The notes beneath the pieces are model-generated. The model searched no databases. It was not told the DNA's origin and was given only the letters and a program-made list of their open reading frames with translations. The position numbers were made by a program, and so were the translations under genes. DNA of 64,000 bases from Macrostomum lignano (taxonomy: Eukaryota). The stretch covers positions 124,001 through 188,000 of the forward strand of contig NIVC01000629.1 of the NCBI GenBank assembly GCA_002269645.1, given 5' to 3'. Positions 308-62,814 of this stretch are shown here, piece by piece (within the stretch, counting starts at the first letter, position 1; each line of letters opens with the position of its first letter).

Positions 308-9382
<9,075 letters not shown>

Positions 9383-29428: not shown

Positions 29429-30007
29429 TCAAATTTTAGCCATCTTAGCCTTCTTCAATGCCGCCAGCTCCTCGCGCATCTGGCGCAGCTCCTCCGCTCG
29501 TTTCTCCAAGAAGACCGCGTACTCAGCCGGGTCAATGCTGTCCACCACCAGCACGCCCATTCTCCTTGCCGATTGGATCACCATTTCAACAATAGAGCGC
29601 AGCGGCGTCGTCTGCAACGGCGGATCCTGCTGCTTTAGCTGGGCAATCTCGTAGATATGCTGCCTAGTAACCATACCGGCCACCTCTTTCATGGGATCTG
29701 TGGCGCCTTTGCTAATACCGGCTGCCTGCTTAATTAAAAAGGACGTTGGCGGATGGTACAGCTGAAGTACAAAGCTCCGATCGGGATTAATAAACACCAC
29801 CGTTGGTATGGGAACGCCCGGCCTAATATGTTTAGTTCGCTCGTTGAAATCTTTACAAAAGCTGGGTATGTTGATGCCGCGCTTGCCCAGCTGCGGGCCA
29901 AGTGGCGGGGCGGGCTTGGCCTGCTGGGCCGGGATGTTGGTCTTGTAGTAGATGGGGTGCACAGCCGCCTCGTAGAAGCCGCGATAGCGTTTCACCTTAG
30001 CAGCCAT
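29429..30007 (-). CDS. MRPL11: Mitochondrial ribosomal protein uL11m, intronless, 192 aa
   Basis: Single ORF with the uL11 signature AKPAPPLGPQLGKRGINIPSFCKDFNERT, plus PIP, PPTSFLIKQAAGI and IYEIA. The N- and C-terminal extensions fit the mitochondrial family. Confidence 0.95.
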   Translation of the reverse strand: MAAKVKRYRGFYEAAVHPIYYKTNIPAQQAKPAPPLGPQLGKRGINIPSFCKDFNERTKHIRPGVPIPTVVFINPDRSFVLQLYHPPTSFLIKQAAGISKGATDPMKEVAGMVTRQHIYEIAQLKQQDPPLQTTPLRSIVEMVIQSARRMGVLVVDSIDPAEYAVFLEKRAEELRQMREELAALKKAKMAKI

Positions 30008-30479
30008 TGGCTTGGCGTGTGGGCTGCTAGCCTTGGCTGGAAAGTGCCGTCTGCGTTGGTTATTTACATGTAATTAATCAATCAAAGAGCTTCATCACTC
30101 AGTTGCATTAACAAGTAGCAATGAGTGGTGATTAAGCACAAAAATTCTGTTTGCTATTTACTTGTGTCTACAGTTTTTGTTTAAGTTTATTAATTGGTTT
30201 CCATTTTTCCTGTTTTTTTAGCTTGCATGGAACCATTAAGAGACAATCAATATTCTCTGTGGACAATCACATTTGACACACGCTGGGTGTGCTGCCAATT
30301 TGCCAATAGTCCAAGAAGAGAGCTGGTCTGGGCGACTTCATACATCAGTGATCATCAAGGGGTCTGTGTGGCCCCTTCAGATCATCATAGCATTATCTGA
30401 GCATGACATCATGCATGACTCAACCTAAGGCTCATGAGTTCAACCTAAGGCTGTCAGAGTCAGATATTTTGACAGGCAA

Positions 30480-30960
30480 TAAATGTTGGACTTCCTTTTT
30501 CATGACGAAGGAGGACAAGCAAGCAGTGTAATGTGGTCTTATGGACTTAAGATGAGCCTAGGCCTGGGGTCGTGAAGATAAATCACAGGTTTTAGAAGGA
30601 AGAAAAGGATATACACCATTTTCTTTAGCTCCCAGATGTTTTGATGGTGAAATTCTTGAGAGTGGCACTGTGACTGCCAAGTATTACACTTTATGCTTGA
30701 CATGGTGCCTGGCTGCTATGACCCCATCCACCCTACTTGCCAGACCTCACATCCTGCAACTTTTGGAGTTCCAAAAGCTCAAGTCATCAATTTCTGGGGG
30801 CCATTGTTGCACATTCAAAACCTAGCTTGAGCAAGCAAAGCAGAACTGAAGGGGTGCTTGCAAGTGAATAGATCAGCTGAATCCATCAGTATAAATTTTA
30901 AATTTCCCTGCCAAGGGTTTCCCATGGCAAGCTTTCCTGAGAAATTTCTTAGCCAAGACA
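30480..30960 (+). mobile_element. Mariner transposase relic
   Basis: PHPPYLPDLTSCNFW at 30722-30766 matches mariner PHPPYSPDLAPCDFW. Upstream ESGTVTAKYY matches the mariner GxTVNxxYY motif. Many stops. Confidence 0.75.
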
Positions 30961-31499
30961 CATACTGTGATGGAAAGATTTCTAATCAAAAGGTGAAAGT
31001 TTAAAAAAATCTGTTGAGCTTTTTTTAAGACAACCATATTTAGTATATGAAAAAATGCTTTTATATAAAATGCATTGTGACCCAATATTCTAATGAATAC
31101 TATTATAGTTGTTTAGACCATAGTAGACTATGTTGCTTATTTAAAGTGAATTGAATTATTTGCTTAATTTTTTGATAGTACAGATCATTAAATAGTTTTA
31201 ACCTCAATCTTATCTTTATCTACATAGTCTAGACAGTATAAATTGACTAGACATATATATGGGATTCAAACATACAAGCCTTTAAAGTATACAGGCCACT
31301 TATTTCTATATGGTTTCTATGCTTTTTAGTGCCTATGCTTTTTGGTGCAATGGTGCCTGGCATTTTGGTATATATATTATAAATTTGAATAAGATGCCAA
31401 ATTAATATTTTATTGTTTATATGCATTACATGCTATATTGTACCTACATGAATGTTACAATGATTGTATATAGCTATTCACATTTATCTATAGAGCAGA

Positions 31500-32400
31500 T
31501 ATTAGAAAGCATGGGAAGCACAACCTTTTCTTAGCCAAAGAGTGCCAAATTTAGCTTTTGAAGAAGGCCACAACATGGTATATGGATAGCACATTTTTTG
31601 GTTGCATACACCTTAAAATATGCCATTTACATATATATTTTGCTTATACAAATGCCACTGACATTTGTCTTTATATCTGGTTAAATGTCAAAAGATTATA
31701 AGTCTTATGAGCCTTTTGAGGCATCCTACCTAAGGCAAAGCCATTTATCTTTGTTATGGATTACAAAGCTGCACAACATAAAAGTTGTCATCAAGTGTTT
31801 CCCCAAAATCGGAATATCAATTGATGTAGCTTTCATTGGACATAGTCTATATTTAGAAAAATCTAGACCCTTGGGTTTCCAAGAGTCTTACAATTAGAAT
31901 GAAATAACATAGCTTTTGTTTGAGGCTAATGGCCTTACACTACTTGCCTATTGCAAAGATAATTCTAGTCTTCAACAATTTGAAGGCTAGCAATATAAGC
32001 AATAAAAAATATTTAAACTCACAATATGTATTAGGTCTATAAATATTTTGTTTTAGGTTGTTCATTTGTATATTTGTATATAATTGTATATTTATGTATG
32101 AAACCCTTGGCTAGCAAGCGTCATGTGTACTATAGAAAACATCAATATCTTTGGCTGTTCTATAAGAAAGTTTTATCTAGATAAAATGATATAAAAAGCT
32201 ACTATAGGCATTTGAATAGCAAGGCTAGATAAGGCAAGCTACAATTTTATATTTTGCTAGGCTTGCTTTTCAATGAGGCTACCTTAATATCTCTATAGCT
32301 GCAAGTGTAGCTTGTAGGCCCTACCACAAAGTGCTTTGTGCCATAGGGTATCTAGTCAATCTGGCAACAAGGTATAAAGCTATAAATAGGCTATTTGACA
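31500..32400 (+). mobile_element. MULE/Mutator transposase relic, heavily transition-mutated
   Basis: WYMDSTF (31576-31596, from DGTF), QMPLTFV, VMDYKAA (from DFEAA), FHWT* (31831-31845), LGFQESY and WLF..R*NDIKSYYRHLNSKA (from RTNNDxEGWHxRLN). Confidence 0.75.
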
Positions 32401-32503
32401 TTTAAATAGATTAGAAAGCTTTTACATTATAAAATATTATTTCTTATTATTAAATATTATTTCTTTTTATTAAATATTAAAAAGTACAAATAGCTATTCT
32501 TAA

Positions 32504-33021
32504 GAGACTTAAGCTTAATCAATAACTAATTTTATGCTTCAAAACTTGTTATAATGTATCTGACACTGAAAAGCTACAATAGTCTATGGTCAAAGTGTTA
32601 ACAAATAAACAAGTCTTAATAGAAACAAATAAAAAGTACTATTGTCTATGGTCAAACTGCCAATGAACAAACAACAAAAGCTTTATACACTATAGTAGTG
32701 GGAAATCCATAATTGGATATTCCCAAATGGCTTCACTAGGTTTAGTTGATGCCACAATTCCTCTAAGTATGTTTTAAATAAGGCTTGTAAAGTCCCATGC
32801 ATGGTGCGCAGTATAGCCTTGCTAAATTTAGAACTTTACTCTAAGTCTTTTGTTATTTGTCAATTTGCTAAAGATCATTGATATTTAGACTTACTATAGA
32901 CCTTTTTTAAGTCAAAAAATGTTCAAACTTTCTGGCCATAGACTATTGCAGCTTTCTGGGGTCAGATACATTATAACAAGTTTTGAAGCATCAAATTAGT
33001 GCTTAATCAGGCTTAAGTCTC
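32504..33021. mobile_element. Non-autonomous DNA transposon with ~90-bp TIRs, GAG...CTC termini and TTAA TSD (Sola3- or Kolobok-like)
   Basis: GAGACTTAAGC...CTTCAAAACTTGTTATAATGTATCTGAC is inverted at both ends. TTAA at 32500-32503 and 33022-33025. Confidence 0.7.
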
Positions 33022-34228
33022 TTAAAAGTATTTATTTGTACTTAAAATAGTTTGTAGATTACTTTTCTGAAGTCAAAATAATTTAACGAATGAAACTTGA
33101 CAATTGCAAAAAGCTATTGCATAAAAAATGGCTATTGGCATTTTAACAGATTAGAGAGCTTTGATTGTTTTAATTATTATAATTGTTAGTATTGTTATTA
33201 ATTATTATTTTTTTATATTCAATAGAATGTAAGGGGATAAGCCTATACAAACATAGTTCCCAGGATTGGCCAACTTAGTATGTTCAAAATATGTTCCACC
33301 ATAAAGGGGGTCCATATGCCATAGCCATAGCCATAAACAAAACTATGGCTTATTCCAATTTTCCATATTCTGTAGCTGTAGCGACTTTAATATTGCCATA
33401 TTCCTGTGGCTCATATAGCCATAGCCATAGTTTTAACAAAAAGTCTAGGAAACAAAATATTTTTAATCAATAAGATAACCTAATGCTTAAACAACTACAA
33501 TTTAAAGTAGAAAATAAAACAAACACTTGATTGCCTTTGAAAGAATATATTTAATCCTTTTACAAAGAGTAACAATACTTAATCACTATTGAAAGTACTA
33601 ATGCTAAACTTTTTTACATTGTTAAAAGTTAGAATTTGCTAGTGTTTCATTGTACTTTATTAAACATAGGCCTAATCTATAAGTTTTTAAGTCTATAATA
33701 TAGTTTAATAAAGTAGGCCTATCTTTGTTTTACTCTACTTGTTTCTAATATTTTTTAGTTATTAACTATGGCTAGGCCTATAAGAATACTACAGAATATG
33801 ATAGCAACTACCATATTTCTATAGCCATAGCTATAAGAGCAGCTATCTACTATAGGCATATCCATAATTGCTGTAGGCACCTATTTTACCATATTTGCTA
33901 TAATATCCTATAGCTGTAGCTATAGCTATGGCAGAACACTAAATCAGATCCATTATTATAATAAAACATTTGAAGTGATAGGCCTACCTTAAATTATGTT
34001 AGAAGTATAGACATAATGTACAATTTTTTGTATTTTTATAATGTACATTCAAAAAAGATACTAGCTATCTTAAAGTGAGTTCTTTATATATAAGATTAAA
34101 ACTATGTTTATATAGGCCCTTAAAGTTTTGTTTATAAGATCTAAAATCTATAAAATCTATACTTGGGGCCTATAATACAAAACTTGTCATTACAATAGAT
34201 TGTCTATTGCCAGATTGTCTATTGCTGG

Positions 34229-34412
34229 CAGGGGCATAGTCAGGAATTTCTCACAAGGGGGGGGGCATGCAAAGATATGAGTAGCTATTGCTAATTGTAC
34301 TTGCTGGTCTAATGGGCAGTTCACAAAAAATTAAGCACCATAAATCAATTTCTTATACCTACCAACCAGGCCCACAGGGGGATACATCCCTATATCCCTG
34401 CCTATGCCACTG
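34229..34412. mobile_element. Short hAT-like MITE
   Basis: Imperfect 11-bp TIR CAGGGGCATAG / CTATGCCACTG. The 8-bp flanks ATTGCTGG and GTTGCCAG differ only by transitions. Confidence 0.4.
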
Positions 34413-35236
34413 GTTGCCAGATTGTCTTGTCACTAGATAGATATATATAACTTTGGCCAATCAGTTTTTATTGACATTAAAAGTGATGTTAAAATGTACA
34501 TAATCGGACATGGCATGGGAATGGGAGAGTACAATGTTTTCTTGTGGGAAGTTTGCTTGCCAAGCTTTGCTTGCGGAATTTTGCTAGTTGAAGTTTGCTT
34601 GCCAAACTTCGCTTGCCAAACATTGGTTGCTGAACTTTGCATCCAAACTTTGCTTGTTGAACTTTGCTTGCAGGAATTTTTTTGCCAAGCTTTGCTTGTA
34701 GTTATAGAATTTTTCTTGCTAAACTTTGCTTGCAAGAACTTTGCCTGTTGAACTTTGCTTGCCAAACTTTGGGTATCCGAGTGTTGGGTATCTTTATGAG
34801 TCATAATATGTAGCAATTCACAGATTGGTAACACATTCATTTGCAAAAAATCTATCCTATATAATTGGCTACCTAAATCATTTGATTTGTGTATTATTTG
34901 AAATTCTGTCCAATTTTTTGTTAAAAATATATTCTTAATAAAAAACTAAATTATTTCATTTCAGCATTAGGGCTTTTTAAATCTGCCATTTCCTTATATA
35001 AAATCATAAGATAACACTATAGGCAACTTCCATGAATCTTAGAAAATGAAAATTAGAAATACACAAGAGCTCAAAAATAGCAAACCTTGGCAAACAAAAT
35101 TTCTGCAAGCAAAGTTTGGCAAGCAAAGTTTGGCAAGCAAATTTCTGTAAGCAAAAGTCCTGCAAGCAAACTTTGGCAAGCAAACTTCTTGCAAGCAAAT
35201 TTCATAGACCTGGGAATGGGGTGGCTATATACTAGT

Positions 35237-35403
35237 AGTAGTAGTAGTAGTAAGTTGGCTCAGGCAAGAAGCCTGTTTGGCCAGTATATTTCTGTGTATT
35301 TAAGATATTTTAGCATTAGTTGTTTAATTATGATTAAGTTCAAAAGGTTAAATTTTTTCACGAGTTAGTAAGTAGTAGTAGTAAGTTGGCTCAGGCAAGA
35401 AGC
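35237..35403. repeat. Two ~33-bp direct repeats with (TAG)n, resembling retroposon 3' tails
   Basis: AGTAGTAGTAGTAAGTTGGCTCAGGCAAGAAGC at ~35240 and ~35371. Confidence 0.6.
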
Positions 35404-35732
35404 GAGTTACGATATTTGTAAAATTATTAAGGTATTTGAAAGAGTGTTTTTTTGTAAAAAGATGTAGTATTACTAGATGACAATTTTTTTCAATGGGGTG
35501 GCTGACTAAGGGCTAAGGCAAGGAGTGAATGGGTGAGTGAGTCATCATTTAGAATGATGCACATGTCTATGTCCATTTTAAAATTGGTTTTAACATTGGT
35601 AAAAACTGATCAGTGAAAGTTAGGGCCTATGTTCATCTGGATTGACTAGAAGTCCTAAAAAGCAAGGTAGGCCTACCAAAAAGTGTAGATCCCTTCTGTG
35701 GAACTCTAGTGTGCATTAAACTAAATTAGAGT

Positions 35733-37643
35733 GGCATTCTTTCGGATGATGATCATTCCGTTTCTTACAAGTTTTGGTTGACGATCACCTATGAAAATGG
35801 TATACTATGCTGTAGAAATCATGGAAAAATGGCAACTATATAATTAGTTTCGGAAGGCAATCATTTCAATATAAGTTTTGAATAGAAAGGATCGCGATCC
35901 GAAACTACAGAAAAACAGAGAAACTTTCCAATTTAAAACCAGCAACATCAATAGCATTATTTCTGTCATGGACGTGTATATAATCAGTTTCGGAATGCGA
36001 TCATTTCAATGATACTTTTGAATACAAATGATCGTGATCCAAAACTACAGCTTTTCTTTCTCATATTTCAGTAGCACTCACTATGGCATGCTCAAAACCT
36101 GCCAAAGAACAGAAAATTGAAGGTGCCGGCTCGTTTGTTGATTTGAAGCCACTGGAGCATATCGAGGAACTGGTGTGTCCCATGTCATGGCGCTTTATTA
36201 CAGCTGAAAACTGGATTGGCCTTCTTCAAAGAGAAGGACTGCTTCCGGAAACCATGCCCTGCCCTATTTGTGCATCGTCAATGAACATTGTCAAGGCCCA
36301 TAATTCGACAGACGGCGTCGTGTTCCGGTGCAAGAAGGGAGCTGGTTCGCCATTTGGAGCACATGAAAAAAGAGTCTCCATTAGAAGGGGAACTTTTTTT
36401 CGAGAATTCTAAACTGAATCCAATGGACATCATTGGGTACTGCATTGGTTATCTTCTGAACACTCCGCAAAGGTAAGCCATGTACTTTCGGTTGATGATC
36501 ATTACAATGTACAAATTACATTAAGAATGATTGCCTTCCGAAACTGAGGGGGGTGCATCCATATTATAACCCACAGTTCACTGCGCGCTATGTACGGCAT
36601 TGAAGCGGAGGCAGCCGTGCAACGGGGCCACTTCATTCGAGATGTAATGTGTGAATGGTTCAAGACACGTCGAGATACGATCTTTCTTGGTGGTGTTGGA
36701 CACATTGTTGAAATAGATGAGTCCCTCTTTGGCCGAAAGATGAAATATAACCAAGGTGCGAAACTGGGCCAACAAATTTAGATTTTTGGCATGACAGACA
36801 GACACGATGGCCGTACTGTCATTTGGCCTATTGAAAACAGATCAAAAGAAACTCTTCTACCTTTAATTGAGAAGTTCATTCTCCCCGGAATGACTGTATT
36901 CAGCGACGGCTGGTCTGCTTACCTTGACTTGGAACACATGGGTTACAGTCACTGGGTTGTCTGCCACAAAGAGCACTTTAAGACGACTATTGAACGAAAT
37001 GGCGAGAAGAAAGACGTACACACGAATCGCATTTTAAGGGCTTTTGGGGTACTGCAAAAGCCAAATTTAAGAATATGCGTGGAACTAGCGCACTACACTT
37101 CGCTTCATACCTAGTCGAGCTAATGTACCGCTCCCACCGTAACAAAGAAATGAAACAGTTCGTCCATGAGTTCTTCCAGGACTTAAAGCACGTCTACCCC
37201 TTGGATGGTGCTCCACGGGTTTTGGATGAGTGCCTCTTTGGCCTCAACTTTGAACTTCTGTCTGTTGAATGAAATGATTACTGCTCCTAAGACAATAAAA
37301 ACTCTGTACTTTCGGAACGCGATCATTTCAGGGCTACCTTCATATTAAAATGATCGTCTTCCAAAACTGACTTACATTCACTAGATGTTAAACTTTGAGA
37401 CACTAATTTTTTTCTAGAATTTCCAAGCTATAGTTTCGGAAGACGATCATTCCATCCAAAATTGATTTAATACACGTGGCGGTTACTACGAAATACACGA
37501 TTCATGACTGATAGCCCCAATGTTGGGTTTTTTAATTTCTGGACAATTTGTTTGACTCGCTTTCTTACTTTCAATTTCAATTACCCAGAACTTTTACATT
37601 GGTGATCGTCACTTTTCAGGTGATCGTCATCCGAAAGAATGCC
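35733..37643 (+). mobile_element. Full-length Merlin (IS1595/ISXO2-like) DNA transposon, 1,911 bp
   Basis: 23-bp TIR GGCATTCTTTCGGATGA(T/C)GATCA and a perfect 8-bp TSD ATTAGAGT (35725-35732, 37644-37651). Palindromic subterminal repeats TTCGGAA..GATCATT. Confidence 0.93.
36083..37272 (+). pseudogene. Merlin transposase pseudogene with one intron (36473-36576)
   Basis: Zn-ribbon CPIC...FRC, then catalytic VEIDES, SDGW and HTNRI(E). Lesions: an extra T in the T7 run at 36394-36400, a TAG stop at 36779-36781 (expected Trp) and a frameshift near 37032-37040. AG|GTAAG...CCACAG|T joins in frame. Confidence 0.9.
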
Positions 37644-39106
37644 ATTAGAGTTTTGTATGCATATGTATCTGAAGATAAAGTTAATATAAAAAGCTAGGGC
37701 CTGCCCTATTTTTCTGACAAAGCAAAAAAGGCATGTATGTAACTTGTAAAAATAGTCAATATCAATACCATTATTAGAATTAGGCTATACAAATAACAAT
37801 GATAAACCATGTCATGATATTGATAGGGCCTAATCTAAAATCATGCTAACCTGGTGAAAATGCGATTGCTTATTCGGCTATTCCTAGTTAAACCACTCTG
37901 TAGACTTAGAGATTTTGAATGAACTAGCAGGTCCAATAATTATTGTAAGTTTAACAGTGTGTACACAAAGAAATAATTTCAATTTTAAAATAGACAATCA
38001 GTTGTGACCATGCATATAAAAAATATGAATAAAAGTAACACAAAAAATGTATATACATTTACAATTGGTTTTTCTTACACTCTTTACAGTATTTTTTTAA
38101 AGAAATTTTGTAGCTATAGATATACCATTTATTTTAACTCTTGAATCATGTAAAACGACTTAAAACGACGGGTCTCCCTAAAACACGCACCGCCCCGCCC
38201 CACAGCGCTACACGTTAAAACAAATTGGACTATAACTGAAGACATTTCAAAATGCGTTTTATGTTAAGCTTTAAGCTTTTATTTAACTTAGTTTTTTTAA
38301 TTTAAAATATTAAATTCCGTGTATAATAAGTGATATTAATAATAATATTAATGAAATAATAATAATTTAATTTAATAATGCAAACGAGAATATGAAAAAT
38401 AATAATAATATTTAAGGTAATAATTAAAGTTAATTATTATGTTACTCTTACAACCAATAGTTTTCTTTGCAATCGAAATACTTAAGCAGTTGATCATGTT
38501 GATTCAATGACACTGGGCCTTTTCAATTTTCATATTGCTTGTTCTGGTTCCAGAACCAGAACCAATTTGTGAAGTATAACTTTTTGTCTCCAAAGGCCTA
38601 ACTAGAGGGAGATAGGCCTACGTGCTATAAAGTTTTTATTATTGAATGACAATCGCCAAGAAGAAAGTGAAAAATTGTGCTAAGAGAGGTTGTTAACGGG
38701 CCAGGGCAAGGCAGTCAAACATTCAACAGAATTAAATATTTATACTGCTGTTTTTCTTGGAAGATCCGATCCGATTCTGATTCTGGAATTGGTAGGGGGC
38801 CTAATATGAAATATGAAAAGCCCCACTGAATAAGCAAACGAAAACCGATTTGTCTAGACTGTAAGAATGCATGCGACCCATAGGCCATATAAAAATTATA
38901 CAGTCAACTGAGCGAGTCAAGGACTTAGGATGGTTCACCCTTAGGTAGGACTACTCAGTCTACTCTACTTGAGTTGATTAGTCCTTGTATTGTATACAGT
39001 GTAGTATATTGAATAGGCCTATTTGCTCAGGCCTGTAATTGTAAAATAAGTGATAGGCCAACACTAGTTCCTAGTCATTGTATTCAAAGACAATAATATA
39101 GATTAT

Positions 39107-40794
39107 GGGTTATTCCATGATAGGGTCATCAAAGGTATAGAAATTTTTTAAAAAATTATTTGCAAATGTGAATGTTTCATTTTGCATATAATTATATGTA
39201 GTTTCATTTTTATGTAGTTTCATACACATTTATCTACCTCTAGGTATATATATATTGTTTTGATCATGGTACCCTTGCAAGATTTTAAATGTCCCGTGGG
39301 ACATTATAAAAAGTTTAATCTAGTTTTCAATAAGAAAAAACTTAATAAACATAATGCATCAAGTGCATAAATAATAAAAATCTTTCTTTCTTATATCTAA
39401 AGACTGAAATTATAAAGTTTTATGATCTAATATAGTTCTATCTATCATAATTTTTTTATTTTAAAAAGTTTGACTTCCCTTTTTTAAGTGTTAAAAACGA
39501 CCATCATTTTTTTTACAAAAAGTTGTTCTACTAATTTTCAAGAGGTTTATAAGTTGATAATTTTTTGCTAAAATATTTTCTGAGCCTATATTTAAGTTTA
39601 TAGTCATTTTTGTTAGTTTATGATAAGTGTAACATGCTGAAAAAACCCTGCAAAGTTACTTAACGACCATCATTTTCTGGAATTCTGAAATCTGTTGATC
39701 TTCATAAAACCTGAATTACTATCATTTATTCCTAAATTTTATACAAAAAAACTGAATTTACTGATATTCTAAAATCATGTCCTTTTTTAAATGTGAATTT
39801 CTTATTCAATTTCTCTTTCAAAGTTTTTACAGTTTTGATTGTAAAGAAAAATATAGTGGAATTCAAGTCTTTTATTAAAAAGTATATTGTCAATTACTTG
39901 TTTGATACCTTAAAATCATTTTCAACCTGCACTATTAAAAAGGTTGTTCCAATTACTAACAATGCACCTAGAACTCTCTACTTTAGTTTGCAATGCACCT
40001 TAACACATGCCCCAATCTTCAGCATAAGTAGTCTAACTAGACTCAAGTTTTTACTATCCATTGGTGCTACTGCTTATTGCCTAACAAATAATCTGTATTT
40101 GCCTTTGGTTTTGTTAATTGTTATATTCTATTCTTTGAATTCCTGAATAGATTAGGACTGTCCATCTTTATGATCATATGTTGAGTTGTGCAATCATGAA
40201 GTGATGTTTTTGTTGAAGGTGCATAAGTACATTTGATCTGAAATGTGAAACAGGTATAATAAATTTTATGGTTAGACAAGCAAGTTATAGTTTTTATATG
40301 AACAACTATGGATTATAAACAATCTTTTAACTGAAATCATATCTAAAAATAGATAATCCTAATACACTTTTTAAAACTGAAGGTCATTTTTTTGAAACAA
40401 ACGACCGTCAGTCAACGATCGTCATTTAAGAAAAAATGTGCAACACAGTTAAAGTTATCTACTAAAATGTAATAATTGTTTGTAACCATTCATCTAGCTA
40501 TTGTTTACTACAATTAATGATCAATTGAGACAAAAACTTGCCTGATTCGCAGGAATCTTAAACTTAAGTTATAAAGTTGGATACATAAACTTTCACCAAA
40601 AACGACCGTCATCGAAAGTTTCTCTCTGCTAAATCAACACAGTAAGACAAATGACTTTAAAATGTATCTTATCTCAATCTAGAGGTCACGCCCATAAATA
40701 TAGAACTCACAAAGTCTCAATTTAGTTTGTCTTTTGTATGATTACTGATTATTATTTGCTCCAACCCAATGACCGTCATCTCGTGGAATTACCC
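39107..40794. mobile_element. Decayed DNA transposon with GGG...CCC termini and 4-bp TSD (Sola2-like)
   Basis: 14-bp TIR GGGT(T/A)ATTCCA(T/C)GA and TSD TTAT (39103-39106, 40795-40798). The internal motif AACGACC(G/A)TCA is repeated many times. Confidence 0.55.
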
Positions 40795-41206
40795 TTATAC
40801 TTTTTTACAAGTCATGTCATATACTATACTATACTAAGCTTAGGGCCTACTAATAATGAATAAATGAAGCTAGGCCTGTCTACCTAGGCTTTATTCTAAC
40901 AATTAGAAACAAAAATATAATTATAAATAGAACTAATAGGTGATAGCTCATGTATTTTAAAAAAATCCTAGATTTTACCAATCTCACAAAAATAGGACTA
41001 TTAGGAGAACATTGTCAAAACAATATTGCAATAGGCTTAATAAATGAACTTTTTTTACAACATATAGTAAAAAAATGACCTTTTTACATGTGACAATATA
41101 GGACTATGAGATCGGACCCTTTATTACATTACAACACTTAATTCTTTTGACATAGCTTATACCAATAGCTATGTACCTACATTAGGCCTATAATCTATAT
41201 GCCAGC

Positions 41207-41801
41207 TGTTGTACTTTGAGGGAGTGTGGCCAAATGAATACAATGCAAGAAGCAATTGCAGGGTAGAAATGTCACAAAGGCTTAAAAGGCCGGTGCACAC
41301 TTATATTATAGTTAAAATACTAATCAGTATGATTCAGCAAACATCAAACCACACAACTTGAACTTGTAGCGGTTGCTGATTGTGCTATGCGATTGACCAA
41401 AGATCATTTTCAGTATAGCCACCAGCTTGTCAAATGTATCAACGCTCATTGTGGGTAGATTCCTTAGCGCATAGACTCTCTGGCCTTCCCTGCCTAGTAG
41501 ATGAACAAAAATCCCCTTTTTGCGTGCATCCAATGCTTCATTTAGGTCCAAGGCCTCCAGATAAATCTTGAATCTTTCAATCCAACAGTTCCAAGGCATA
41601 TGTGGCTATCCTAAGTGGGCAAGAAACACGCGTGGCTCGGGAATGCTCAGACTCGTTGCCATGTTGTACTTTGAGGCAGCGTGGCCAAATGAATACAATG
41701 CAAAAAGCGATTGCAGGGTAGAAAAGTCACAAAGGCTTGAAAGGCTGGTGCGCACTTATATTATAGTTAAACTATTAACCAGCATGATTCAGCAGACATC
41801 A
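41207..41801 (-). mobile_element. Miniature Ty3/Gypsy-derived LTR element (TRIM-like), 595 bp
   Basis: Two 140-bp direct repeats TGTTGTA...ACATCA (41207-41346, 41662-41801). PBS-like TGGCAACGAG lies directly inside the 5' LTR (41661-41652). Gag N-terminal fragment WNCWIERFKIYLEA...RKKGIFVHLLGREG...RYKF. Confidence 0.75.
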
Positions 41802-42304
41802 AACCCTCCACTCGGCCTAGGCCAGTCTGGGTAGACAGACAAGCCCCCAAGCCAATCAGAATGCAAGAACCCTAACTGACGTATAAGCAGCATACACAAC
41901 ACCAGCTCTATGGCACAATTTTTTAGCAGATTGTTCTTTATGCTAGATACTTTATGCCAACTATTTTTTTCATATCCATTATAGTTTACTATATATACAC
42001 CTTAATTTTTTGGCATATATAATTATAAGATTAGAGAATGGCCTGTCAATGGAATTTTTTTCTAGGCCTATTTCCAACTATTTTTTTATTAGAGCCAGGG
42101 GGTTATGTGCACATTCCGCCCATTTCGCCTATTCCGCTAACTCCCCTGAGTAGGCATAAAAGTGTGCAGATATGTACGCAGGCATACACCCATACAGGAG
42201 TGTACAGTGGCCTTAACTTTATTTTATCATTAGGCATATACACTTCATTGTGCCTTGGGGGGTTAGCTCTCAAGGCTGTTAATTGCACACAAGCCAAGAT
42301 TCTA

Positions 42305-42390
42305 ATTCAGCCCCAAATTAATATGACTGCACTTGGAATCAAGCCTAGGTCACTGGTATACCAGAGCCTGGGCTAGACCATAGGGCTTTA
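42305..42390 (-). mobile_element. Decayed tRNA-derived SINE head
   Basis: Minus strand GCCCTATGGTCTAGC (box A-like) and GGCTTGATTCC (box B with CpG lost). Confidence 0.4.
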
Positions 42391-42628
42391 TTTCTATTTG
42401 TTGGCTATATAAAAAAATATAATATAAAATACAAGTGAGTATACATATCACAAGTTACTTTTTTATAAAAAGTACAAAAGTATTTATTTTTATACCTTTT
42501 TATATTGAACTTGTGCTACTAATATATTTAGACTGGGAATGACAATATCCATATAGCTAAATTTAAAAAGACCTATCCCAAATTGCTTGAGTAGGCCTAA
42601 AAAGAATTTTGTTACATACATATATAAT

Positions 42629-42768
42629 CTTGGGAATCACTTAGCCATTTCTATTGGCAACATATACATGTAAGTTGCTATTAGCCAAGAGCAGTCATGT
42701 GACTATTATTCTGTCCAATAGTGACTTACATGTGTGTTGCCAATAGAAATGGCCAGGTGAATCCCTAG
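42629..42768. mobile_element. Hairpin MITE-like inverted repeat
   Basis: GCCATTTCTATTGGCAACA..CATGTAAGT is inverted over ~55 bp, with a short spacer. Confidence 0.6.
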
Positions 42769-42826
42769 GTTGCACCCAAGCATGTTTTGTTACAAGCATA
42801 AGTTATTCTTATTCTATATAAGTCAG

Positions 42827-43123
42827 CATACATGCGCAACCTCCAAAATTCGGTCGGCCGTGCGACTTAGTTTTAACAAAAATGCGACGTAGTTTTTGGC
42901 CAAAAATGCGACTTACATGTAAAAAACCCTAAAGCAAAATTAACGCAACTTTGGGTAAACGGCAGGAGTAACTATGACTGTTTTATTAAGCCAAAATGCC
43001 TCGTCAGCTACTTAGTACTACTACTTGGGTATTTTTTTAGGTGGACATTTTTGCGACTTTCTTGGTTGGCTGCCAAATCAGTCGGCCGGATTGGCCGACT
43101 CGGCCGACTGTTGCGCACGTATG
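42827..43123. mobile_element. Young hAT-type MITE, 297 bp
   Basis: 14-bp TIR CATAC(A/G)TGCGCAAC and a perfect 8-bp TSD TAAGTCAG (42819-42826, 43124-43131). It retains CpGs. Confidence 0.85.
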
Positions 43124-43751
43124 TAAGTCAGTGTTTGTTACATAAATGATTCTAGTAAACTTTTAAATCATTTTTTTATATTTTCACTTAATCTTAAAAA
43201 TCTCTTTTGTGTATGTAAATATACTTTACTTTAAATTATTGATCAATTTTTTTCATGTACTTTTTAAGACTATCATCTGGGTTTTTGGGCCATATGGGTT
43301 TTTTTGTCCCCTTGAAAATATTAATAGCAACTGGATTTTTTGCATCAAAGACAAATCTGGCAACTTCATTTTCCCCGTGCTAGTTGCCAATTTCAAAAAA
43401 TGATTTTGTAATGTAATAAAAGTACTTATAAATCAATATGATGGAATTATTAGTTTGTTATTGTTTGTAGTATAGAAAGCAATATTAGAGTTAAGAGAAC
43501 AAATTTCTGCTTTTTAAGTATAGCTTTAGAAATATCTATCCATTCTATCTTTGAAAATCCTTGACGTTATTTGGCTAGTTGCCAATAATAGGCAACCAAA
43601 AATAAACATTGGCAACTGGATTTGAGCCCCAAGGGCCAGCTGACAACTGGATTTCCAACCTTAAAAAACTCAAACTAGGCCTATCATCATTTTATCTAAA
43701 AACTGTAATAGTTTTTTAATAATATTTTTGATATGACTTGTTTACTTCTTA

Positions 43752-43882
43752 TTTTTTGTGTCTAGTATGCCATTTTTAGCTTTTTTATTTCTTAAACTAT
43801 TAATTTATTATTAGTTATTTATTAAAGTATTATTAATAGTTTAGAAATAAAAAAGCTAAAAATGGCATACTGGACACAAAAA
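43752..43882. repeat. Long AT-rich inverted repeat (foldback/MITE-like)
   Basis: TTTTTTGTGTCTAGTATGCCATTTTTTAGCTTTTTTATTTC..AAACTATTAAT is inverted, with a ~25-nt spacer. Confidence 0.65.
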
Positions 43883-45180
43883 ATTATAAGTAAAAAGTCA
43901 TATAGTAAAAAGAATAGAATAGCTGAAATAGTGAAAACCTTTGCAAGAAAGCCTAAATGTCTGTTTTATGCATAAAATATATGGGAAAACCATAGGAATA
44001 AAAACACTTATGCCATTTTTTATAGTATATAATTATTTCCTTTTTCTTTGTAATAGAAATATTTTATCATATTAGAAGTTTTCCTAACTACTAACTAATT
44101 TCCTAACTCAAAAGAGCAACAAAGTTAACCTATTAAAGAATAAAAACATTAAAAATTTCATAAATATTTTGTGTTTTACAATAAAAGATTAGTTAGATAA
44201 AAAGCATATTATCTTGTCTGTGTATTTTATAATGACTTCATTATAAATGCTAGAACTTGGTAATTTTTTTTCATTTTTTAGAATACAAAAGCATCTATTT
44301 TTTTCTTCAATGTTTTTTAAAAGCTATTTTTTATAAGAGATTATTAGCATCCCAATGAAATTCCAAGGAAAACGGATAATTTTTTTTGAATAAGGTTTTT
44401 CTCTATGACAAAGTATTTTTTCTCTTCTTTTTAGTTCCTAGTTGCTTTTTATTCAATGTAATTGTATTGCAAAATTATTTATTTGTAAAAAAACTCCTTT
44501 TCAAAGTTTGCCTTATATGTATATTGACAAGTCATAGGACCCTTACCAAAGTCCCTATCATATGTAAAGATTCAATAAAAACATGACTTTTGTTCACAGA
44601 TACTAGATTAACTAGATGAGACACTAAGCACATTTTGTGCTAGCTATTTTTAGTTTAGTAGTGAGTTAAACTGAAACATTTTAATATTAAAGACAATGCT
44701 TATTATAATAAAAATGCTTATAATAATATGCTTTATAATAATGCTTACTATTATAAAGCATTGTCTTGTGCTTAAAGACAAAGGCTATGGCTCTTGCCAT
44801 TAGCTTAAACCCTTCAAACTCTATATAGAACCTCTGCCCCTACTCTGCCACCCAATTTTTATTATCTCCCTTAGCTATTTTAGCCTAAATCTGCCTTGTC
44901 AATGGCTAATGTACTGTACATTGTAGCTGAACCAATTGGCAAGCTTTTTTCGTCATTAAAACAAATTTGAAAGTCATATACTTCACCTTATTATGTCAAG
45001 TTTTGCATCCACATATTTGATGATAATTGTTGACAAGAAAGATTAATTACCCTGAATATCTCCAATCCCAAAAATTTTATTCCTGGTTGTGCTCTATCAA
45101 TCTGGGGTTTTTGTAAAATCCTAGCACTCCTAACCAAGCAAGATAGGCTTATTATATAATCTGAATGCTAATGATTTCAG

Positions 45181-48100
45181 CTACCAATACCGGGTCATTC
45201 ATATATACTGCAGCAGCAGTTGCAGTTGCGCCAGCAGCAGCAACAGCAGCAGGCAAATTATGGCGGCGGCCTATTTATGCGCCCACCAGCCAACCTGCTG
45301 CCGAGGAGTAGCAGCAGTAGCGGAGGTGGCGGCGGCTTGCTGCCACCTCTAGCTCGCTCAAATTCCTGTCAGCAACTGTCGCTTGAGCAGCGCAAACCGG
45401 CTGCGCCAGCTAGTTCGAGTGCTTCATCATCAGCTAATAATGAGCCATCATCGGCTGCTATGATAAAAGAGATCGATAAGAAATGCGAATCCTATTGCAA
45501 AGCTGTGTACGCCGTGGCCGAGCGCTATCTAAAGCACATGCCAATCGCCCAGCGCACAGATATGCGACGCTTATTCAACACGTGGAAGGACGCGCCAGAC
45601 AAATTAGACGTCAGCTTTATGTATAAACTATCGGGCTGGAGAGCCGTGTACACTTTGAACTTATTCCGCAGTAGAATCCAGACAGTGTGGCTGTCGCTAA
45701 GACAATTAATGTCGCCAAAGTCTGGCATCGCCGATCAGCTCACTGAGATATTTGGCCGGACACAGAGAGTAGTTAGCATCGGCTGCGGTCCGGGGCCCTG
45801 CGTAGCCGCTATGCTTATTGTGCTGCGCGAATGCTTCGGCATTACGCAATACGTGAAGCTGATTGGTATCGATCAGTTCATTGGCTGGGGTCCCTATGTT
45901 GTGTCGATGAACGGCGTTGAAGCCGCCGGTCCGAGCGGTGTAGAGTTTTGGCACGAACGAGTCGAGGAAGCAACGATTGACAAGCTGCCAAATGCCAACG
46001 TGGCTATTATGTCTTACACTGACGCTGCCGTGCACACTCCGAAATTTTGGGAAACAATGCGACTTAAATTTGCTTTCATCCTTGTGCTTGACCAGCGCAA
46101 AGGAGCCCTGTCGCGAGAATTGCAGCGCCAAGGATTCTGCCATTTCGAATACGAATTTAAGGGCAGCAAGAGGGTATTTTATTACATTAATCCGTTTGGC
46201 GAGATGCTCAAATTGGCTCACTGCACCGCCTCGACTACGGCGGCCAGCTCCGGCGTGCCTCGATTGGCCACGGCGGACAGCGACGACTCCGACGCCTACG
46301 ACAGTGACTCGTCGTCCGACACTTCCTCATCCACGTCCGGCGATGATGCCGATGCCGTAGAGACTGACGAGCACATTGAGCAGCAGGTGGCCGGCGTGAT
46401 GCAGCACCTGTTAGCCAAGGTTGAGCAGCAGATGAGTTTAGGCTTGGCTAGGACTCGAACTCGCGACCGTAGGCGGGCAATGCAAGAGGCGGCGGCCGCA
46501 AGATCCGCAGCCGAAGATGACGAAGTGACGCCGGAGCTGGAGCGGGCGATCACACAGCGCCTGCTCGCGGCTGTCGATACGATGAACTCGTCAGGTGGCG
46601 ATGGTGGCGCCGATTCCGATGACGCTATTGAGTTGCATGCTGAGCAAGATGAGGCTAGCAATCCTGACGAATTGATGGCAACACCTGAGTCCGAAAATCA
46701 GCAGAAGCAGCAGGAGCAGCAGGACGAATCTTCTTGCAGTCGAGGCCGGGGCACTGCGGTCCGCAAGAGACCGCAGCAGCAGAAGCCGCAGCCGTCCCAG
46801 ATTCCTGCATCGGCGGCGCCTACACCTAGTCGGGTCCGCCGCGCGCCACCTTCCGATCAAGAGCAGCAGCAGCAACAGGAGGAGGTGGAGCCTCCAGCAA
46901 AGAAGCGCAAACAGCCGCTTAGCAAAGCCGAGAAAGACCAGCTATTAAAATCTCTTCTAAAAGAAGTCAGCTCAGCAGAGTCAGACGAAGAGCAGCAAGC
47001 AAATTCGTCACCAAAGCAAGCTCCGCCGCATGCTCAAGAAAAAGTGCTCTCCGTTCATATGCCCGATTGGGCGCGCGATCTTATCGCCAATTGGTCAACC
47101 GGTGACGTGGCTGATTCACCTCCGGCTAGCTCGCCAACCGCCGAATTGCCTGCGCCTCAAGAGATCGGCGCTCCGCTGCCATTTGGCATCAAGCGGGTCG
47201 CCTCACAGCCCGCTAACGTCCGGCCGCTGATGCCGGCTCAAGTTCGGGTTAAAGCAGTGCAAAGTTCGCAGTCAGTTCGTCCTCAAAATCAGGTGCGTCT
47301 TCAGTTTACTTTTTGTTTATTTTAAAGTAGACCTGAAGCCAGCGACCCGTCAAGTACTTTTTAAGTACTTATATAAATGCATGAATGTACGCCAAACTGC
47401 ACACTTGCGCACTTCATGCAATCCATGCAATGTTAGGAAGTGGTTTTAGTCTAGTGGTTAGAGCGTCGGACTCACGACTTGAAGGTCTGGGGTTCGATTC
47501 CCGATCCCACTGAAACAATTTGTATCCTTGAGCAAGACACTTAACTCTGCATTGCTTCAGTTCAGCCATCTGTGAAATGGGAGCCAGCGTTTGCTGGGGT
47601 AGTTAAGGGGTGTGACAACCTCCAGTCCTTGGACTGAACAGCCGTACGCAGCTGTCGGTTGCACATCTTCCCATTAGGGCAGGTTCAATCAATTATATTA
47701 TCATTATTATGCAATGCATGCGCTTTGTCTTGACCCATCATTTCCGTAGGTCACATAACTATCCATGCCTTAACCCGTCCTCCGGTGCCGCAGGTGCGTC
47801 CCCAGGTGTCACAGGTTCGACCTCGGGCATCTCAAGTAGGTTCCCAGGCGCCGCAGGTCCAAACTCAGGTGCCGCAGGTTCGAACTCAGGTGCCGCAGGT
47901 TCGAACTCAGGTGCCGCAGGTTCGAACTCAGGTGCCACAGGTTCGACCCCAGACACCACAGGTTCGACCTCAGACAGCACAGGTTCGAACTCAGACACCA
48001 CAGGTTCGACCTCAGGCACCACAGGTTCGACCTCAGGCACCACAGGTTCGACCTCAGGCACCACAGCTTCGACCTCAGGCACCACAGGTTCAAACTCAGG

Positions 48101-50161: not shown

Positions 50162-50244
50162 GAGGGCTTTGTAGTATTAGTGTTGCCTTTGTTTGCTCGA
50201 GTTGACAATTACGAAAAAATATGTTCTTGCCGGCGTGCTCAGCA

Positions 50245-56219: not shown

Positions 56220-56315
56220 CGATTAGTCTGTTGACGAACTTTTATTTCCTTTGCTAAAGTACATTTCATTACATGGGATCATTTTCCTACCAGAATCGCG
56301 AAGCTGAAATCTCAA

Positions 56316-62783: not shown

Positions 62784-62814
62784 CTGCGAGAACAGGGGTT
62801 GCGACTGGTTTGTC

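What the first reader, a model, noticed from the sequence alone, without database searches (positions are those of the whole stretch)
30400..45100. A 15-kb CpG-erased block with graded, RIP-like G:C->A:T hypermutation of transposons
Seen: the block is AT-rich and nearly CpG-free, whereas the flanking genes are CpG-rich. Departures from transposase consensus motifs are mostly explained by transitions. Mariner YSPDLAPCD->YLPDLTSCN: three of four changes fit CpG transitions. MULE DG->DS (GAT AGC, consistent with CG->TA), Q->stop (CAG->TAG) and H->Y. Merlin W->stop (TGG->TAG). The Sola-like TIR pair differs by TG/TA. The two 140-bp LTRs differ at 13 sites by my count: 10 transitions, 4 at CpG, and several CpA/TpG->TpA. 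Young insertions (Merlin, hAT MITE) keep most CpGs and show only one CpG change per TIR; old ones are erased. Established: 5mC deamination gives CpG->TpG/CpA, and fungal RIP gives CpA->TpA; RIP is not an established animal process. Inference: a sharply bounded, repeat-targeted cytosine-modifying or mutagenic system acting beyond CpG, either dense methylation including non-CpG or a RIP-like mechanism.
Basis: partly seen in the sequence, partly recalled or inferred. Interest (0 to 1): 0.8.

Follow-up and report, generated by a model that had tools for sequence, protein, structure and literature searches.

The report
CpG-depleted transposon graveyard between two flatworm genes
A 15-kb AT-rich pile of dead transposons between two genes of the flatworm Macrostomum lignano has lost most of its CpG sites, as expected from ordinary decay of methylated cytosines, and shows no sign of a fungal RIP-like hypermutation.

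Summary
The window is Macrostomum lignano, assembly GCA_002269645.1, contig NIVC01002328.1. The block is the intergenic space between two divergently transcribed genes, MRPL11 (-) and an orphan 701-aa ORF (+).

It is AT-rich (GC 0.33), but CpG loss is patchy:
- 30060-35700: 16 CpG against 151 expected (o/e 0.11).
- 43501-45100: o/e 0.11.
- Other stretches: 0.35-0.68.
- A young Merlin transposon (35733-37643): 0.89.

Exons and AT-rich non-tandem DNA outside the block keep CpG o/e of about 0.7-1.1.

Among dinucleotides, only CpG separates the block from controls. CpA/TpG is not depleted (1.20), and the RIP substrate index is 1.46, where RIP requires 1.03 or less. Copy and haplotype differences have an ordinary spectrum (22 transitions to 11 transversions). 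A 138-copy minisatellite inside the block on another haplotype shows no C-to-T excess. A mild CpA-to-TpA bias appears outside the block too.

Best reading: germline CpG methylation followed by 5mC deamination. M. lignano retains DNMT1 and DNMT3. Old insertions are erased and young ones are not. A weak CAG/CTG deficit tracks CpG loss but is inconclusive. This is a known kind of process, of modest interest.

The parts
29429..30007 (-). Left boundary gene: mitochondrial ribosomal protein L11 (uL11m). Single exon, CpG o/e 0.93.
   Evidence: Pfam Ribosomal_L11_N and Ribosomal_L11. 99% identical to M. lignano BOX15_Mlig010582g1. CpG statistics.
30060..35732 (.). Oldest, CpG-erased stretch: GC 0.33, 16 CpG against 151 expected, o/e 0.11. 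It is made of unrecognisable transposon relics.
   Evidence: No Pfam domain found.
30460..30870 (+). Mariner-like relic with frameshifts, stops and an internal deletion. Carries 'ILTGNKCW' and 'PHPPYLPDLTSCNFW'.
   Evidence: Read from three-frame translations. Motif-level only: Pfam negative and protein search empty.
31555..31888 (+). CSFHWT*SIFRKI*TLGF'). The identity is unconfirmed.
   Evidence: Codons listed. Pfam negative.
32482..33043 (.). Inverted-repeat (MITE or foldback-like) element. Arms are about 120 nt and 84% complementary, and share no CpG.
34448..35622 (.). Foldback-like element. Its arms are built of 14-bp tandem units (TTTGCTTGCCAAAC).
35733..37643 (+). Young Merlin (IS1595-like) DNA transposon. 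It has about 23-bp TIRs with one CpG/TpG mismatch and a perfect 8-bp target-site duplication ATTAGAGT. The transposase ORF has one TAG stop (36779) and frameshifts. CpG o/e is 0.89.
   Evidence: Pfam DDE_Tnp_IS1595, E=4.7e-17. Homologue alignment. TIR and TSD read output. CpG.
37644..43500 (.). Mixed-age AT-rich relics with intermediate CpG o/e (0.35-0.68) and CpG clusters at 38150-38920, 40400-40780 and 42835-43120.
41200..41805 (.). All four CpG sites are intact in only one copy.
   Evidence: The internal 91-aa ORF has no Pfam hit.
43501..45100 (.). Second CpG-erased stretch: GC 0.27, 3 CpG against 28.6 expected, o/e 0.11.
45220..47325 (+). Right boundary gene: orphan ORF (first exon of a gene of about 1094 aa). 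The N-terminal domain has a class I SAM-methyltransferase fold. CpG o/e 1.09.

Best explanation
The block is the 15-kb intergenic space between two divergently transcribed M. lignano genes. It has filled with DNA-transposon and other repeat insertions of different ages. In the germline this DNA, but not the neighbouring genes, introns or minisatellites, has been CpG-methylated by the DNMT1/DNMT3 system that this flatworm retains. Spontaneous deamination of 5-methylcytosine then turned CpG into TpG/CpA roughly 10-30 times faster than other sites change.

The oldest relics have therefore lost about 90% of their CpGs. Middle-aged pieces have lost about half. The recent Merlin insertion has lost almost none. 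The low G+C content is the ordinary composition of non-coding DNA in this genome, lowered by a further 2-3 points through CpG loss. It is not a separate hypermutation.

Shown: the CpG-specific, domain-restricted, age-graded depletion, and the absence of any RIP-type signature.
Inferred: that methylation is the cause, and that it acts in the germline.
For: 1. Organism and real locus. MRPL11 is 99% identical to the M. lignano protein. L002 from NIVC01002328.1 is 100% identical to window 19429-40034. The same junction occurs on two further contigs, one of them a 0.64%-diverged haplotype.

2. CpG-specific loss. The strand-symmetric dinucleotide table shows CG at 0.10-0.11 in the erased stretches, against 0.66-1.06 in six non-tandem controls. 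Every other dinucleotide lies within or just beyond the control range.

3. Domain specificity. Exons of five genes in the window have CpG o/e 0.72-1.09. AT-rich non-tandem DNA outside the block has 1.03 (GC 0.30) and 1.06 (GC 0.40).

4. Age grading. Merlin (perfect TSD, 1 of 23 TIR mismatches) has o/e 0.89. The region of the 91%-identical direct repeats has about 0.5. The region of the 84%-identical inverted repeat has about 0.09.

5. Toy simulations. These started from control-like sequence. CpG transitions at 20x, with a CpA bias of 1-3x, reproduce GC 0.34-0.36, CA/TG 1.23-1.40, TA 0.77-0.95 and a substrate index of 1.35-1.57. Observed values are 0.33, 1.20, 0.95 and 1.46. Adding a 10x CpA-to-TpA process gives CA/TG 0.65 and an index of 0.68.

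6. Enzymes. M. lignano keeps DNMT1 and DNMT3 and has low-level 5mC. This is stated, citing Wasik et al. 2015, in PMC11292947, PMC9246332 and PMC10658182.

7. Arrays outside the block. There are no rare C-to-T variants at 550 CpG site-copies, so CpG is not hypermutable there.
Against: - No methylation data for this locus were available here.
- The primary paper (Wasik 2015) could not be read, and reviews describe 5mC in this species as 'low'.
- The TpG/CpA excess (1.20) is only slightly above controls (1.00-1.19), so the reciprocal product signal is weak.
- Substitutions could not be polarised, because no other copies of these transposon families could be retrieved.
- The two clean CpG<->TpG differences between haplotypes in the block could be gains rather than losses.
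- This is a single locus.
Confidence: 0.65

Rival explanations
1. RIP-like or other repeat-targeted C-to-T hypermutation acting at CpA and other non-CpG cytosines.
For: TpA/ApT is 1.02 in the erased stretch, above the classical 0.89 RIP threshold. Individual lesions fit CpA/TpG to TpA: two CAG-to-TAG-type stops in the MULE-like frame, TGG to TAG in Merlin, and GAA to AAA in the mariner relic.
Against: - The substrate index (CpA+TpG)/(ApC+GpT) is 1.46, not 1.03 or less. CA/TG o/e is 1.20.
- TpA/ApT is equally near 1 in AT-rich controls outside the block.
- Haplotype differences in the block are 22 transitions to 11 transversions. Pooled pairs give 48:26. RIP-context changes are 12 of 36 non-CpG transitions, against 40% expected (P=0.85).
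- The 130 aligned copies of a 23-bp array inside the block carry 54 C-to-T variants, against 52 C transversions, 69 T-to-C and 81 T transversions.
- The CpA-to-TpA bias is present outside the block: 21/1922, against 5/1712 and 11/2220.
- A simulated RIP-like process gives quite different indices.
- Stop codons created by transitions are CpA/TpG-to-TpA by necessity.
Confidence: 0.04
2. CpG methylation plus a weaker non-CpG component at CAG/CTG (CWG). This is the kind of side activity that DNMT3-type enzymes show in mammalian germ and stem cells. It would add CAG-to-TAG decay in the most heavily methylated DNA.
For: - Markov-1 o/e of CAG/CTG is 0.73 in the erased stretch and 0.83 over the block minus Merlin (z=-3.5 to -3.8 against dinucleotide-preserving shuffles).
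- The product CTA/TAG is 1.17 (z=+3.5 to +5.0).
- Across 25 non-tandem segments, CpG o/e correlates with CAG/CTG o/e (rho 0.62; 0.76 among AT-rich segments) and inversely with TAG (rho -0.67).
- Within the block in 1-kb windows, CAG/CTG is the trinucleotide best correlated with CpG o/e (rho 0.69, P=0.0045).
Against: - The block-only correlation falls to rho 0.42 (not significant) with 1.5-kb windows, and does not survive correction for 28 trinucleotides.
- Several unrelated trinucleotides deviate more: TAA/TTA z=-8.5, GCC/GGC z=+7.6.
- Much of the contrast comes from CAG/CTG excess (1.34) in genic controls.
- None of the haplotype differences examined was shown to lie in a CWG context.
- The comparison of old with young sequence is confounded with coding against decayed sequence.
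Confidence: 0.12
3. There is no local process. The erased stretches simply consist of transposon families that were already AT-rich and CpG-poor when they inserted, because of family-level history or horizontal origin.
For: No family consensus could be built, so ancestral CpG content is unknown. Many MITE and foldback elements are intrinsically AT-rich.
Against: At least four different element types in 30-35.7 kb all show o/e of about 0.04-0.14. That points to a regional cause rather than a family-specific one. In the 144-bp direct repeats, every CpG is intact in only one copy (4 of 13 differences), which shows CpG loss after duplication in place. A pre-depleted family would still need methylation-driven decay somewhere.
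Confidence: 0.15
4. Assembly chimera or contaminant sequence.
For: None beyond the abrupt change in composition.
Against: Three separate contigs of the assembly carry MRPL11 joined to the same block sequence. One is a diverged haplotype with 33 substitutions and two indels in the block.
Confidence: 0.01

Closest known systems
5mC-deamination CpG decay of germline-methylated repeats (mosaic animal methylomes; CpG o/e is used as a proxy for repeat methylation, for example in Cnidaria, PMC8857923)
   Same: CpG-specific depletion down to o/e of about 0.1. TpG/CpA is retained. The depletion is restricted to one domain while neighbouring DNA is unaffected, and it grows with the age of the insertion. 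The species has DNMT1 and DNMT3.
   Different: In most invertebrates the depleted (methylated) compartment is housekeeping gene bodies. Here the housekeeping gene MRPL11 and the other exons are CpG-normal, and the intergenic transposon pile is the depleted compartment. Methylation at the locus was not measured.
Fungal repeat-induced point mutation (RIP; Neurospora RID-dependent)
   Same: AT-rich, repeat-rich, sharply bounded block next to GC-richer genes, with many stop codons in transposase relics.
   Different: There is no CpA/TpG depletion, no TpA excess over local background, no transition-only spectrum and no C-to-T excess in a 138-copy array. The CpG-specificity is the opposite of RIP's CpA preference.
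Non-CpG (CAG/CAC) methylation by DNMT3 enzymes in mammals, and plant CMT3 CHG methylation
   Same: A weak CAG/CTG deficit with a TAG/CTA excess co-varies with CpG loss.
   Different: The effect is small (o/e 0.73-0.83), not robust to window size, and confounded. No methylation data are available.
APOBEC/AID-type editing of retroelements
   Same: G:C-to-A:T changes in mobile-element relics.
   Different: There is no strand asymmetry: GC and AT skew are near 0 across the block. GA/TC o/e is 0.73-0.79, at the low end of a control range of 0.74-0.95. The elements are mostly DNA transposons.

Membership tests
Methylation-driven CpG decay (germline 5mC deamination) | CpG observed/expected far below 1 given the local base composition | tested here: met
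   16 CpG against 151.2 expected in 30060-35700, and 3 against 28.6 in 43501-45100.
Methylation-driven CpG decay (germline 5mC deamination) | The products TpG/CpA are retained or in excess, and no other dinucleotide is affected | tested here: met
   CA/TG is 1.20, against 1.00-1.19 in controls. All other dinucleotides are within or just beyond the control range. The excess is small.
Methylation-driven CpG decay (germline 5mC deamination) | Depletion is confined to a compartment, and neighbouring DNA of similar composition is not depleted | tested here: met
   AT-rich non-tandem controls have CpG o/e 1.03 and 1.06. Exons have 0.72-1.09.
Methylation-driven CpG decay (germline 5mC deamination) | CpG sites are hypermutable in recent divergence within the compartment | tested here: inconclusive
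   2 of 22 transitions between haplotypes are CpG<->TpG, although CpG sites make up under 1% of bases. They cannot be polarised. 4 of the 13 direct-repeat differences are at CpG.
Methylation-driven CpG decay (germline 5mC deamination) | Maintenance and de novo C5-DNA methyltransferases are present in the genome | not tested
   Literature only: DNMT1 and DNMT3 are retained in M. lignano (PMC11292947, PMC9246332). My protein searches were exhausted.
Methylation-driven CpG decay (germline 5mC deamination) | 5mC is actually present on the block in germline DNA | not testable with these tools
   This needs bisulfite, EM-seq or nanopore data.
RIP (repeat-induced point mutation) | (CpA+TpG)/(ApC+GpT) of 1.03 or less (substrate depletion) | tested here: not met
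   The value is 1.46 in the erased stretch and 1.31 over the whole block. Controls are 1.19-1.45.
RIP (repeat-induced point mutation) | TpA/ApT raised above the non-RIP background | tested here: not met
   The value is 1.02, but AT-rich controls outside the block give 0.91-0.96, and TA o/e is 0.95 against 0.80-0.94.
RIP (repeat-induced point mutation) | Differences between duplicated copies are almost exclusively C:G-to-T:A transitions | tested here: not met
   The ratio is 22 transitions to 11 transversions between haplotypes, and 48:26 in pooled pairs. Array variants are only 21% C-to-T.
RIP (repeat-induced point mutation) | RID-type methyltransferase in the genome | not tested
   No search capacity was left.
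Non-CpG (CWG/CHG) cytosine methylation footprint | CAG/CTG depleted and TAG/CTA enriched beyond the dinucleotide expectation, specifically in the CpG-depleted compartment | tested here: inconclusive
   The o/e values are 0.73-0.83 and 1.17. Correlations are rho 0.62-0.76, but they are window-size dependent and confounded by genic controls.
APOBEC/AID editing | Strand-asymmetric G-to-A with TC/CC context depletion | tested here: not met
   GC and AT skew are about 0 in the block. GA/TC is 0.73-0.79, at or near the low end of a control range of 0.74-0.95.
Merlin / IS1595 DNA transposon (element 35733-37643) | DDE_Tnp_IS1595 transposase, terminal inverted repeats, 8-9-bp target-site duplication | tested here: met
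   Pfam E=4.7e-17. 37-58% identity to Merlin-type transposases, with the invariant residues kept. TIR of about 23 bp and TSD ATTAGAGT read.
Mariner (relic 30460-30870) | Recognisable DD34D transposase domain | tested here: not met
   There is no Pfam hit and no homologue. Only short signature motifs remain.
LTR retrotransposon (41200-41805) | LTR pair flanking gag/pol | tested here: not met
   The 144-bp direct repeats are only 455 bp apart. The internal 91-aa ORF has no Pfam hit. I treat this as a local duplication of unknown origin.

The most novel reading that the evidence does not exclude
In M. lignano, cytosine methylation is aimed at intergenic transposon islands rather than at gene bodies, the reverse of the usual invertebrate pattern. 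In the most heavily marked DNA it also touches CAG/CTG cytosines, leaving a weak CAG-to-TAG footprint next to the strong CpG one.
Probability: 0.12. Interest if true: 0.6.

Novelty: new member of a known kind. Interest (0 to 1): 0.25.

Why it matters
The methylation landscape of free-living flatworms has been described as unknown (PMC9246332). M. lignano is the flatworm model that still has DNMT1 and DNMT3.

This locus suggests a testable pattern: transposon-filled intergenic DNA carries the long-term mark of CpG methylation, while a housekeeping gene body next door does not. If that holds genome-wide, M. lignano would be a tractable invertebrate, with RNAi and transgenesis, for studying transposon-directed methylation.

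It does not point to a new mutagenic system. The RIP-like idea can be dropped.

Tried and rejected
1. Six-frame Pfam scans of the block, both as ORF fragments and as contiguous frames. Only Merlin was found, so the mariner, MULE, hAT and Sola labels could not be verified.

2. Building family consensuses to polarise substitutions.
- The Merlin protein search found no M. lignano copies (best hit 58% identity).
- The mariner relic search found nothing.
- BLAST of the block against the rest of the window and L001 found no paralogues outside the block.

3. Using three assembly copies as a rooted trio. L003 is identical to the window over 10.8 kb, which leaves only one independent comparison.

4. 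Treating the 4.2-kb L001-specific insertion as a young transposon with CpG o/e 0.55. I rejected this when TRF showed it is a 23-bp minisatellite.

5. Simple fixed-register slicing of minisatellites lost register. I replaced it with consensus-anchored copy finding.

6. Reading Wasik et al. 2015 directly. The paper is not held.

7. An RT-like ORF at 11.7-12.1 kb as an outside-block transposon control. It has no Pfam support.

8. Rfam found nothing in the window.

Full report
**Source of the sequence**

The 192-aa ORF at 29429-30007 (-) is mitochondrial ribosomal protein L11 (Pfam; closest solved structures are mammalian uL11m). It is 99% identical to a Macrostomum lignano protein. Fetching that protein's loci showed that L002, from assembly GCA_002269645.1 contig NIVC01002328.1, is 100% identical to window 19429-40034. 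The window is therefore that contig, with window coordinate + 118507 = contig coordinate.

Two further contigs carry the same MRPL11-block junction. L003 is identical over 10.8 kb. L001 is a haplotype 0.64% diverged (42 substitutions in 6.6 kb), with a 46-bp indel and a 4175-bp insertion at window 33905/6. Chimerism and contamination are excluded.

**What surrounds the block**

The flanks are not simply 'CpG-rich genes'. About a third of the window (20.8 kb) is made of 25 different minisatellite arrays. Many of these sit in introns of real genes:
- a DNAJC13/RME-8 gene at 6.7-8.7 kb;
- an ADAM10-type gene at about 19-28 kb (gene calls for L001 and L002);
- an actin-related gene at 54-56 kb and a WD40 gene at 59-60 kb (identified only by reading the ORF translations; not run through any profile search).

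The block is the space between MRPL11 (-) and a 701-aa ORF at 45220-47325 (+). It is a divergent intergenic region.

**Checking the observation**

The block has GC 0.330 and 167 CpG (o/e 0.42). The flanks have GC 0.467 and 0.500, with CpG o/e 0.67 and 0.68. The depletion is patchy:

| Region | CpG observed / expected | o/e |
|---|---|---|
| 30060-35700 | 16 / 151.2 (Poisson P about 1e-44) | 0.11 |
| Merlin element, 35720-37656 | 73 / 82.4 | 0.89 |
| 37657-39000 | 23 / 33.7 | 0.68 |
| 39001-41200 | 15 / 42.8 | 0.35 |
| 41201-43500 | 39 / 80.0 | 0.49 |
| 43501-45100 | 3 / 28.6 | 0.11 |
| MRPL11 CDS | 41 / 43.9 | 0.93 |
| ORF701 | 176 / 161.4 | 1.09 |

Dense CpG ends at 30054 and resumes at 45191, so the boundaries coincide with the two gene starts.

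The depletion is not a general property of AT-rich non-coding DNA here. Non-tandem intervals outside the block have CpG o/e of 0.65-1.09. These include a GC 0.30 interval at 1.03 and a GC 0.40 interval at 1.06. Exons of five genes have 0.72-1.09.

- The direct repeats at 41207-41350 and 41662-41805 differ at 13 sites: 10 transitions, 3 transversions, 4 at CpG.
- YLPDLTSCNFW, GAT AGC and the TAG codons are present.
- The Merlin stop is TAG, where 15 homologues have W.

Only Merlin is verified as a transposon:
- Pfam DDE_Tnp_IS1595, E=4.7e-17.
- TIRs of about 23 bp with one CpG/TpG mismatch.
- A perfect 8-bp duplication, ATTAGAGT.

The mariner and MULE relics rest on short motifs only.

**Is the process CpG-specific or RIP-like?**

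A strand-symmetric dinucleotide table compares the block with six non-tandem control intervals:

| Dinucleotide | Erased stretches | Controls |
|---|---|---|
| CG | 0.10-0.11 | 0.66-1.06 |
| CA/TG | 1.20 and 1.04 | 1.00-1.19 |
| TA | 0.95 and 0.89 | 0.80-0.94 |
| GA/TC | 0.73-0.79 | 0.74-0.95 |

CG is the only dinucleotide that separates the block from the controls. GA/TC is at the low end of the control range; AG/CT, CC/GG and GC run modestly above it.

The classical RIP indices follow. The thresholds of 0.89 or more and 1.03 or less are from my own knowledge of the Neurospora literature.
- TpA/ApT is 1.02. AT-rich controls give 0.91-0.96, so this is uninformative.
- (CpA+TpG)/(ApC+GpT) is 1.46, far from RIP.

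Toy simulations started from control-like sequence:
- CpG-only hypermutability (20x), with a CpA bias of 1-3x, gives GC 0.34-0.36, CA/TG 1.23-1.40, TA 0.77-0.95 and an index of 1.35-1.57. This brackets the observed 0.33, 1.20, 0.95 and 1.46.
- A 10x CpA-to-TpA process gives CA/TG 0.65, TA 1.31 and an index of 0.68.

**Substitution spectra**

Between the window and haplotype L001 there are 33 differences in 5742 bp of the block. These are 22 transitions and 11 transversions. Seven are CpA/TpG<->TpA and two are CpG<->TpG.

I pooled haplotype differences, the 84% inverted-repeat arms and the 91% direct repeats. RIP-context changes are 12 of 36 non-CpG transitions, against 40% expected from context frequencies (P=0.85). 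Overall there are 48 transitions to 26 transversions.

The L001-specific insertion is a 23-bp minisatellite of about 138 copies sitting inside the CpG-erased stretch. That makes it an ideal target for any repeat-directed mutator. Its variants relative to the array consensus are:
- 54 C-to-T;
- 52 C transversions;
- 69 T-to-C;
- 81 T transversions.

There is no G:C-to-A:T excess.

In 12 arrays outside the block, rare variants show C-to-T at these rates:
- CpA: 21/1922
- CpT: 5/1712
- CpC: 11/2220
- CpG: 0/550

So a mild CpA-to-TpA bias exists outside the block, and CpG is not hypermutable there.

Every stop codon produced by a single transition is CAA/CAG to TAA/TAG, TGG to TAG/TGA, or CGA to TGA.

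**A possible non-CpG trace**

Markov-1 trinucleotide analysis gives the following values:

| Trinucleotide | Erased stretch | Block minus Merlin | Controls |
|---|---|---|---|
| CAG/CTG | 0.73 (z=-3.8) | 0.83 (z=-3.5) | 1.34 |
| CTA/TAG | 1.17 | 1.17 | 0.86 |

The z-scores are against dinucleotide-preserving shuffles.

CpG o/e and CAG/CTG o/e correlate across 25 non-tandem segments (rho 0.62; 0.76 among AT-rich segments). They also correlate across 1-kb windows of the block alone (rho 0.69, P=0.0045, the strongest of 28 trinucleotides).

Against this:
- The correlation falls to 0.42 with 1.5-kb windows.
- Other trinucleotides deviate more: TAA/TTA z=-8.5, GCC/GGC z=+7.6.
- Part of the contrast is the CAG excess of genic controls.

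I treat this as an inconclusive hint of CWG decay, not a finding.

**Explanation**

M. lignano retains DNMT1 and DNMT3 and has low-level 5mC. This is stated in PMC11292947, PMC9246332 and PMC10658182, all citing Wasik et al. 2015, which I could not read. One of these reviews says that genome-wide patterns in free-living flatworms are unknown.

The simplest account is germline CpG methylation of this transposon pile, with 5mC deamination acting over time. The grading supports this:
- Merlin (TIR 1/23 diverged, intact TSD): o/e 0.89.
- Region of the 91% direct repeats: about 0.5.
- Region of the 84% inverted repeat: about 0.09.

By rough inference, CpG decays some 6-30 times faster than the average site, which is typical of methylated CpG.

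AT-richness needs no special mutator. Nearby CpG-normal non-coding DNA has GC 0.30-0.40, and complete CpG loss at this composition removes only about 3 points of GC.

**Comparison with known systems, and novelty**

This is the familiar footprint of methylated repeats. It fails every sequence-based RIP criterion I could test, and it shows no APOBEC-type asymmetry.

The mildly unusual aspect is the compartment. The housekeeping gene body is CpG-normal while the intergenic transposon DNA is depleted. That is the reverse of the common invertebrate gene-body pattern. It is one locus only, and methylation was not measured.

**Verdict**

Noticed in passing
window 1-29206 and 47845-64000: About 32.5% of the window (20.8 kb) consists of 25 unrelated minisatellite arrays, with units of 16-48 bp and up to 103 copies. 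Many lie inside introns of ordinary genes (ADAM10-type, actin-related, WD40).
   Followed up: partly
window 33905/33906; L001:1901-6073: One haplotype (NIVC01000215.1) carries a 4175-bp insertion made of a 23-bp minisatellite (about 138 copies, TGACATGGTGGCTCTTTAATGTT) plus an 18-bp array. It is absent from the window and from L003, so it is a large structural polymorphism inside the CpG-erased stretch.
   Followed up: yes
window 45460-46260 (+), N-terminal domain of the 701-aa ORF: An orphan domain with a GxGxG-like motif (VSIGCGPG). It has no Pfam or PDB sequence hit and only 17 relatives among 1.84 billion representatives. AlphaFold (pLDDT 87.5, pTM 0.85) gives a class I SAM-methyltransferase fold. 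The best Foldseek hits are small-molecule and rRNA methyltransferases (ChlM 4qdj, E=1e-5), not DNA C5-methyltransferases. The M. lignano paralogues are 1094 and 1217 aa.
   Followed up: partly
window 47439-47512 (+): ARAGORN predicts a tRNA-Val(CAC) about 110 bp downstream of the ORF701 stop. Rfam at gathering threshold reported nothing in the window.
   Followed up: no
minisatellite arrays outside the block (for example 60585-62351, 4677-5617, 55052-55721): Rare variants in arrays show C-to-T at CpA about 2-4 times more often than at CpT or CpC (21/1922 against 5/1712 and 11/2220). There are none at 550 CpG site-copies. This suggests a genome-wide CpA-to-TpA bias and unmethylated arrays.
   Followed up: partly
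L002 and L003 (NIVC01002328.1 and NIVC01000629.1): Two contigs of the assembly are identical over at least 10.8 kb of this locus. This is either a redundant haplotig or a very recent duplication in this partly polyploid genome.
   Followed up: no
window 9665-11111: A second, smaller AT-rich stretch (GC 0.30) outside the block is moderately CpG-depleted (o/e 0.50). It also has low CAG/CTG (0.86) and high TAG (1.19), like the block.
   Followed up: no
window 36481-36506 and 35735-35760, 37305-37330, 37429-37454: A 26-bp motif related to the Merlin terminal repeat (CTTTCGGxxGATGATCATT) recurs four times within the element. One copy lies inside the transposase reading frame, and 59-74-bp subterminal direct repeats are also present.
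   Followed up: no
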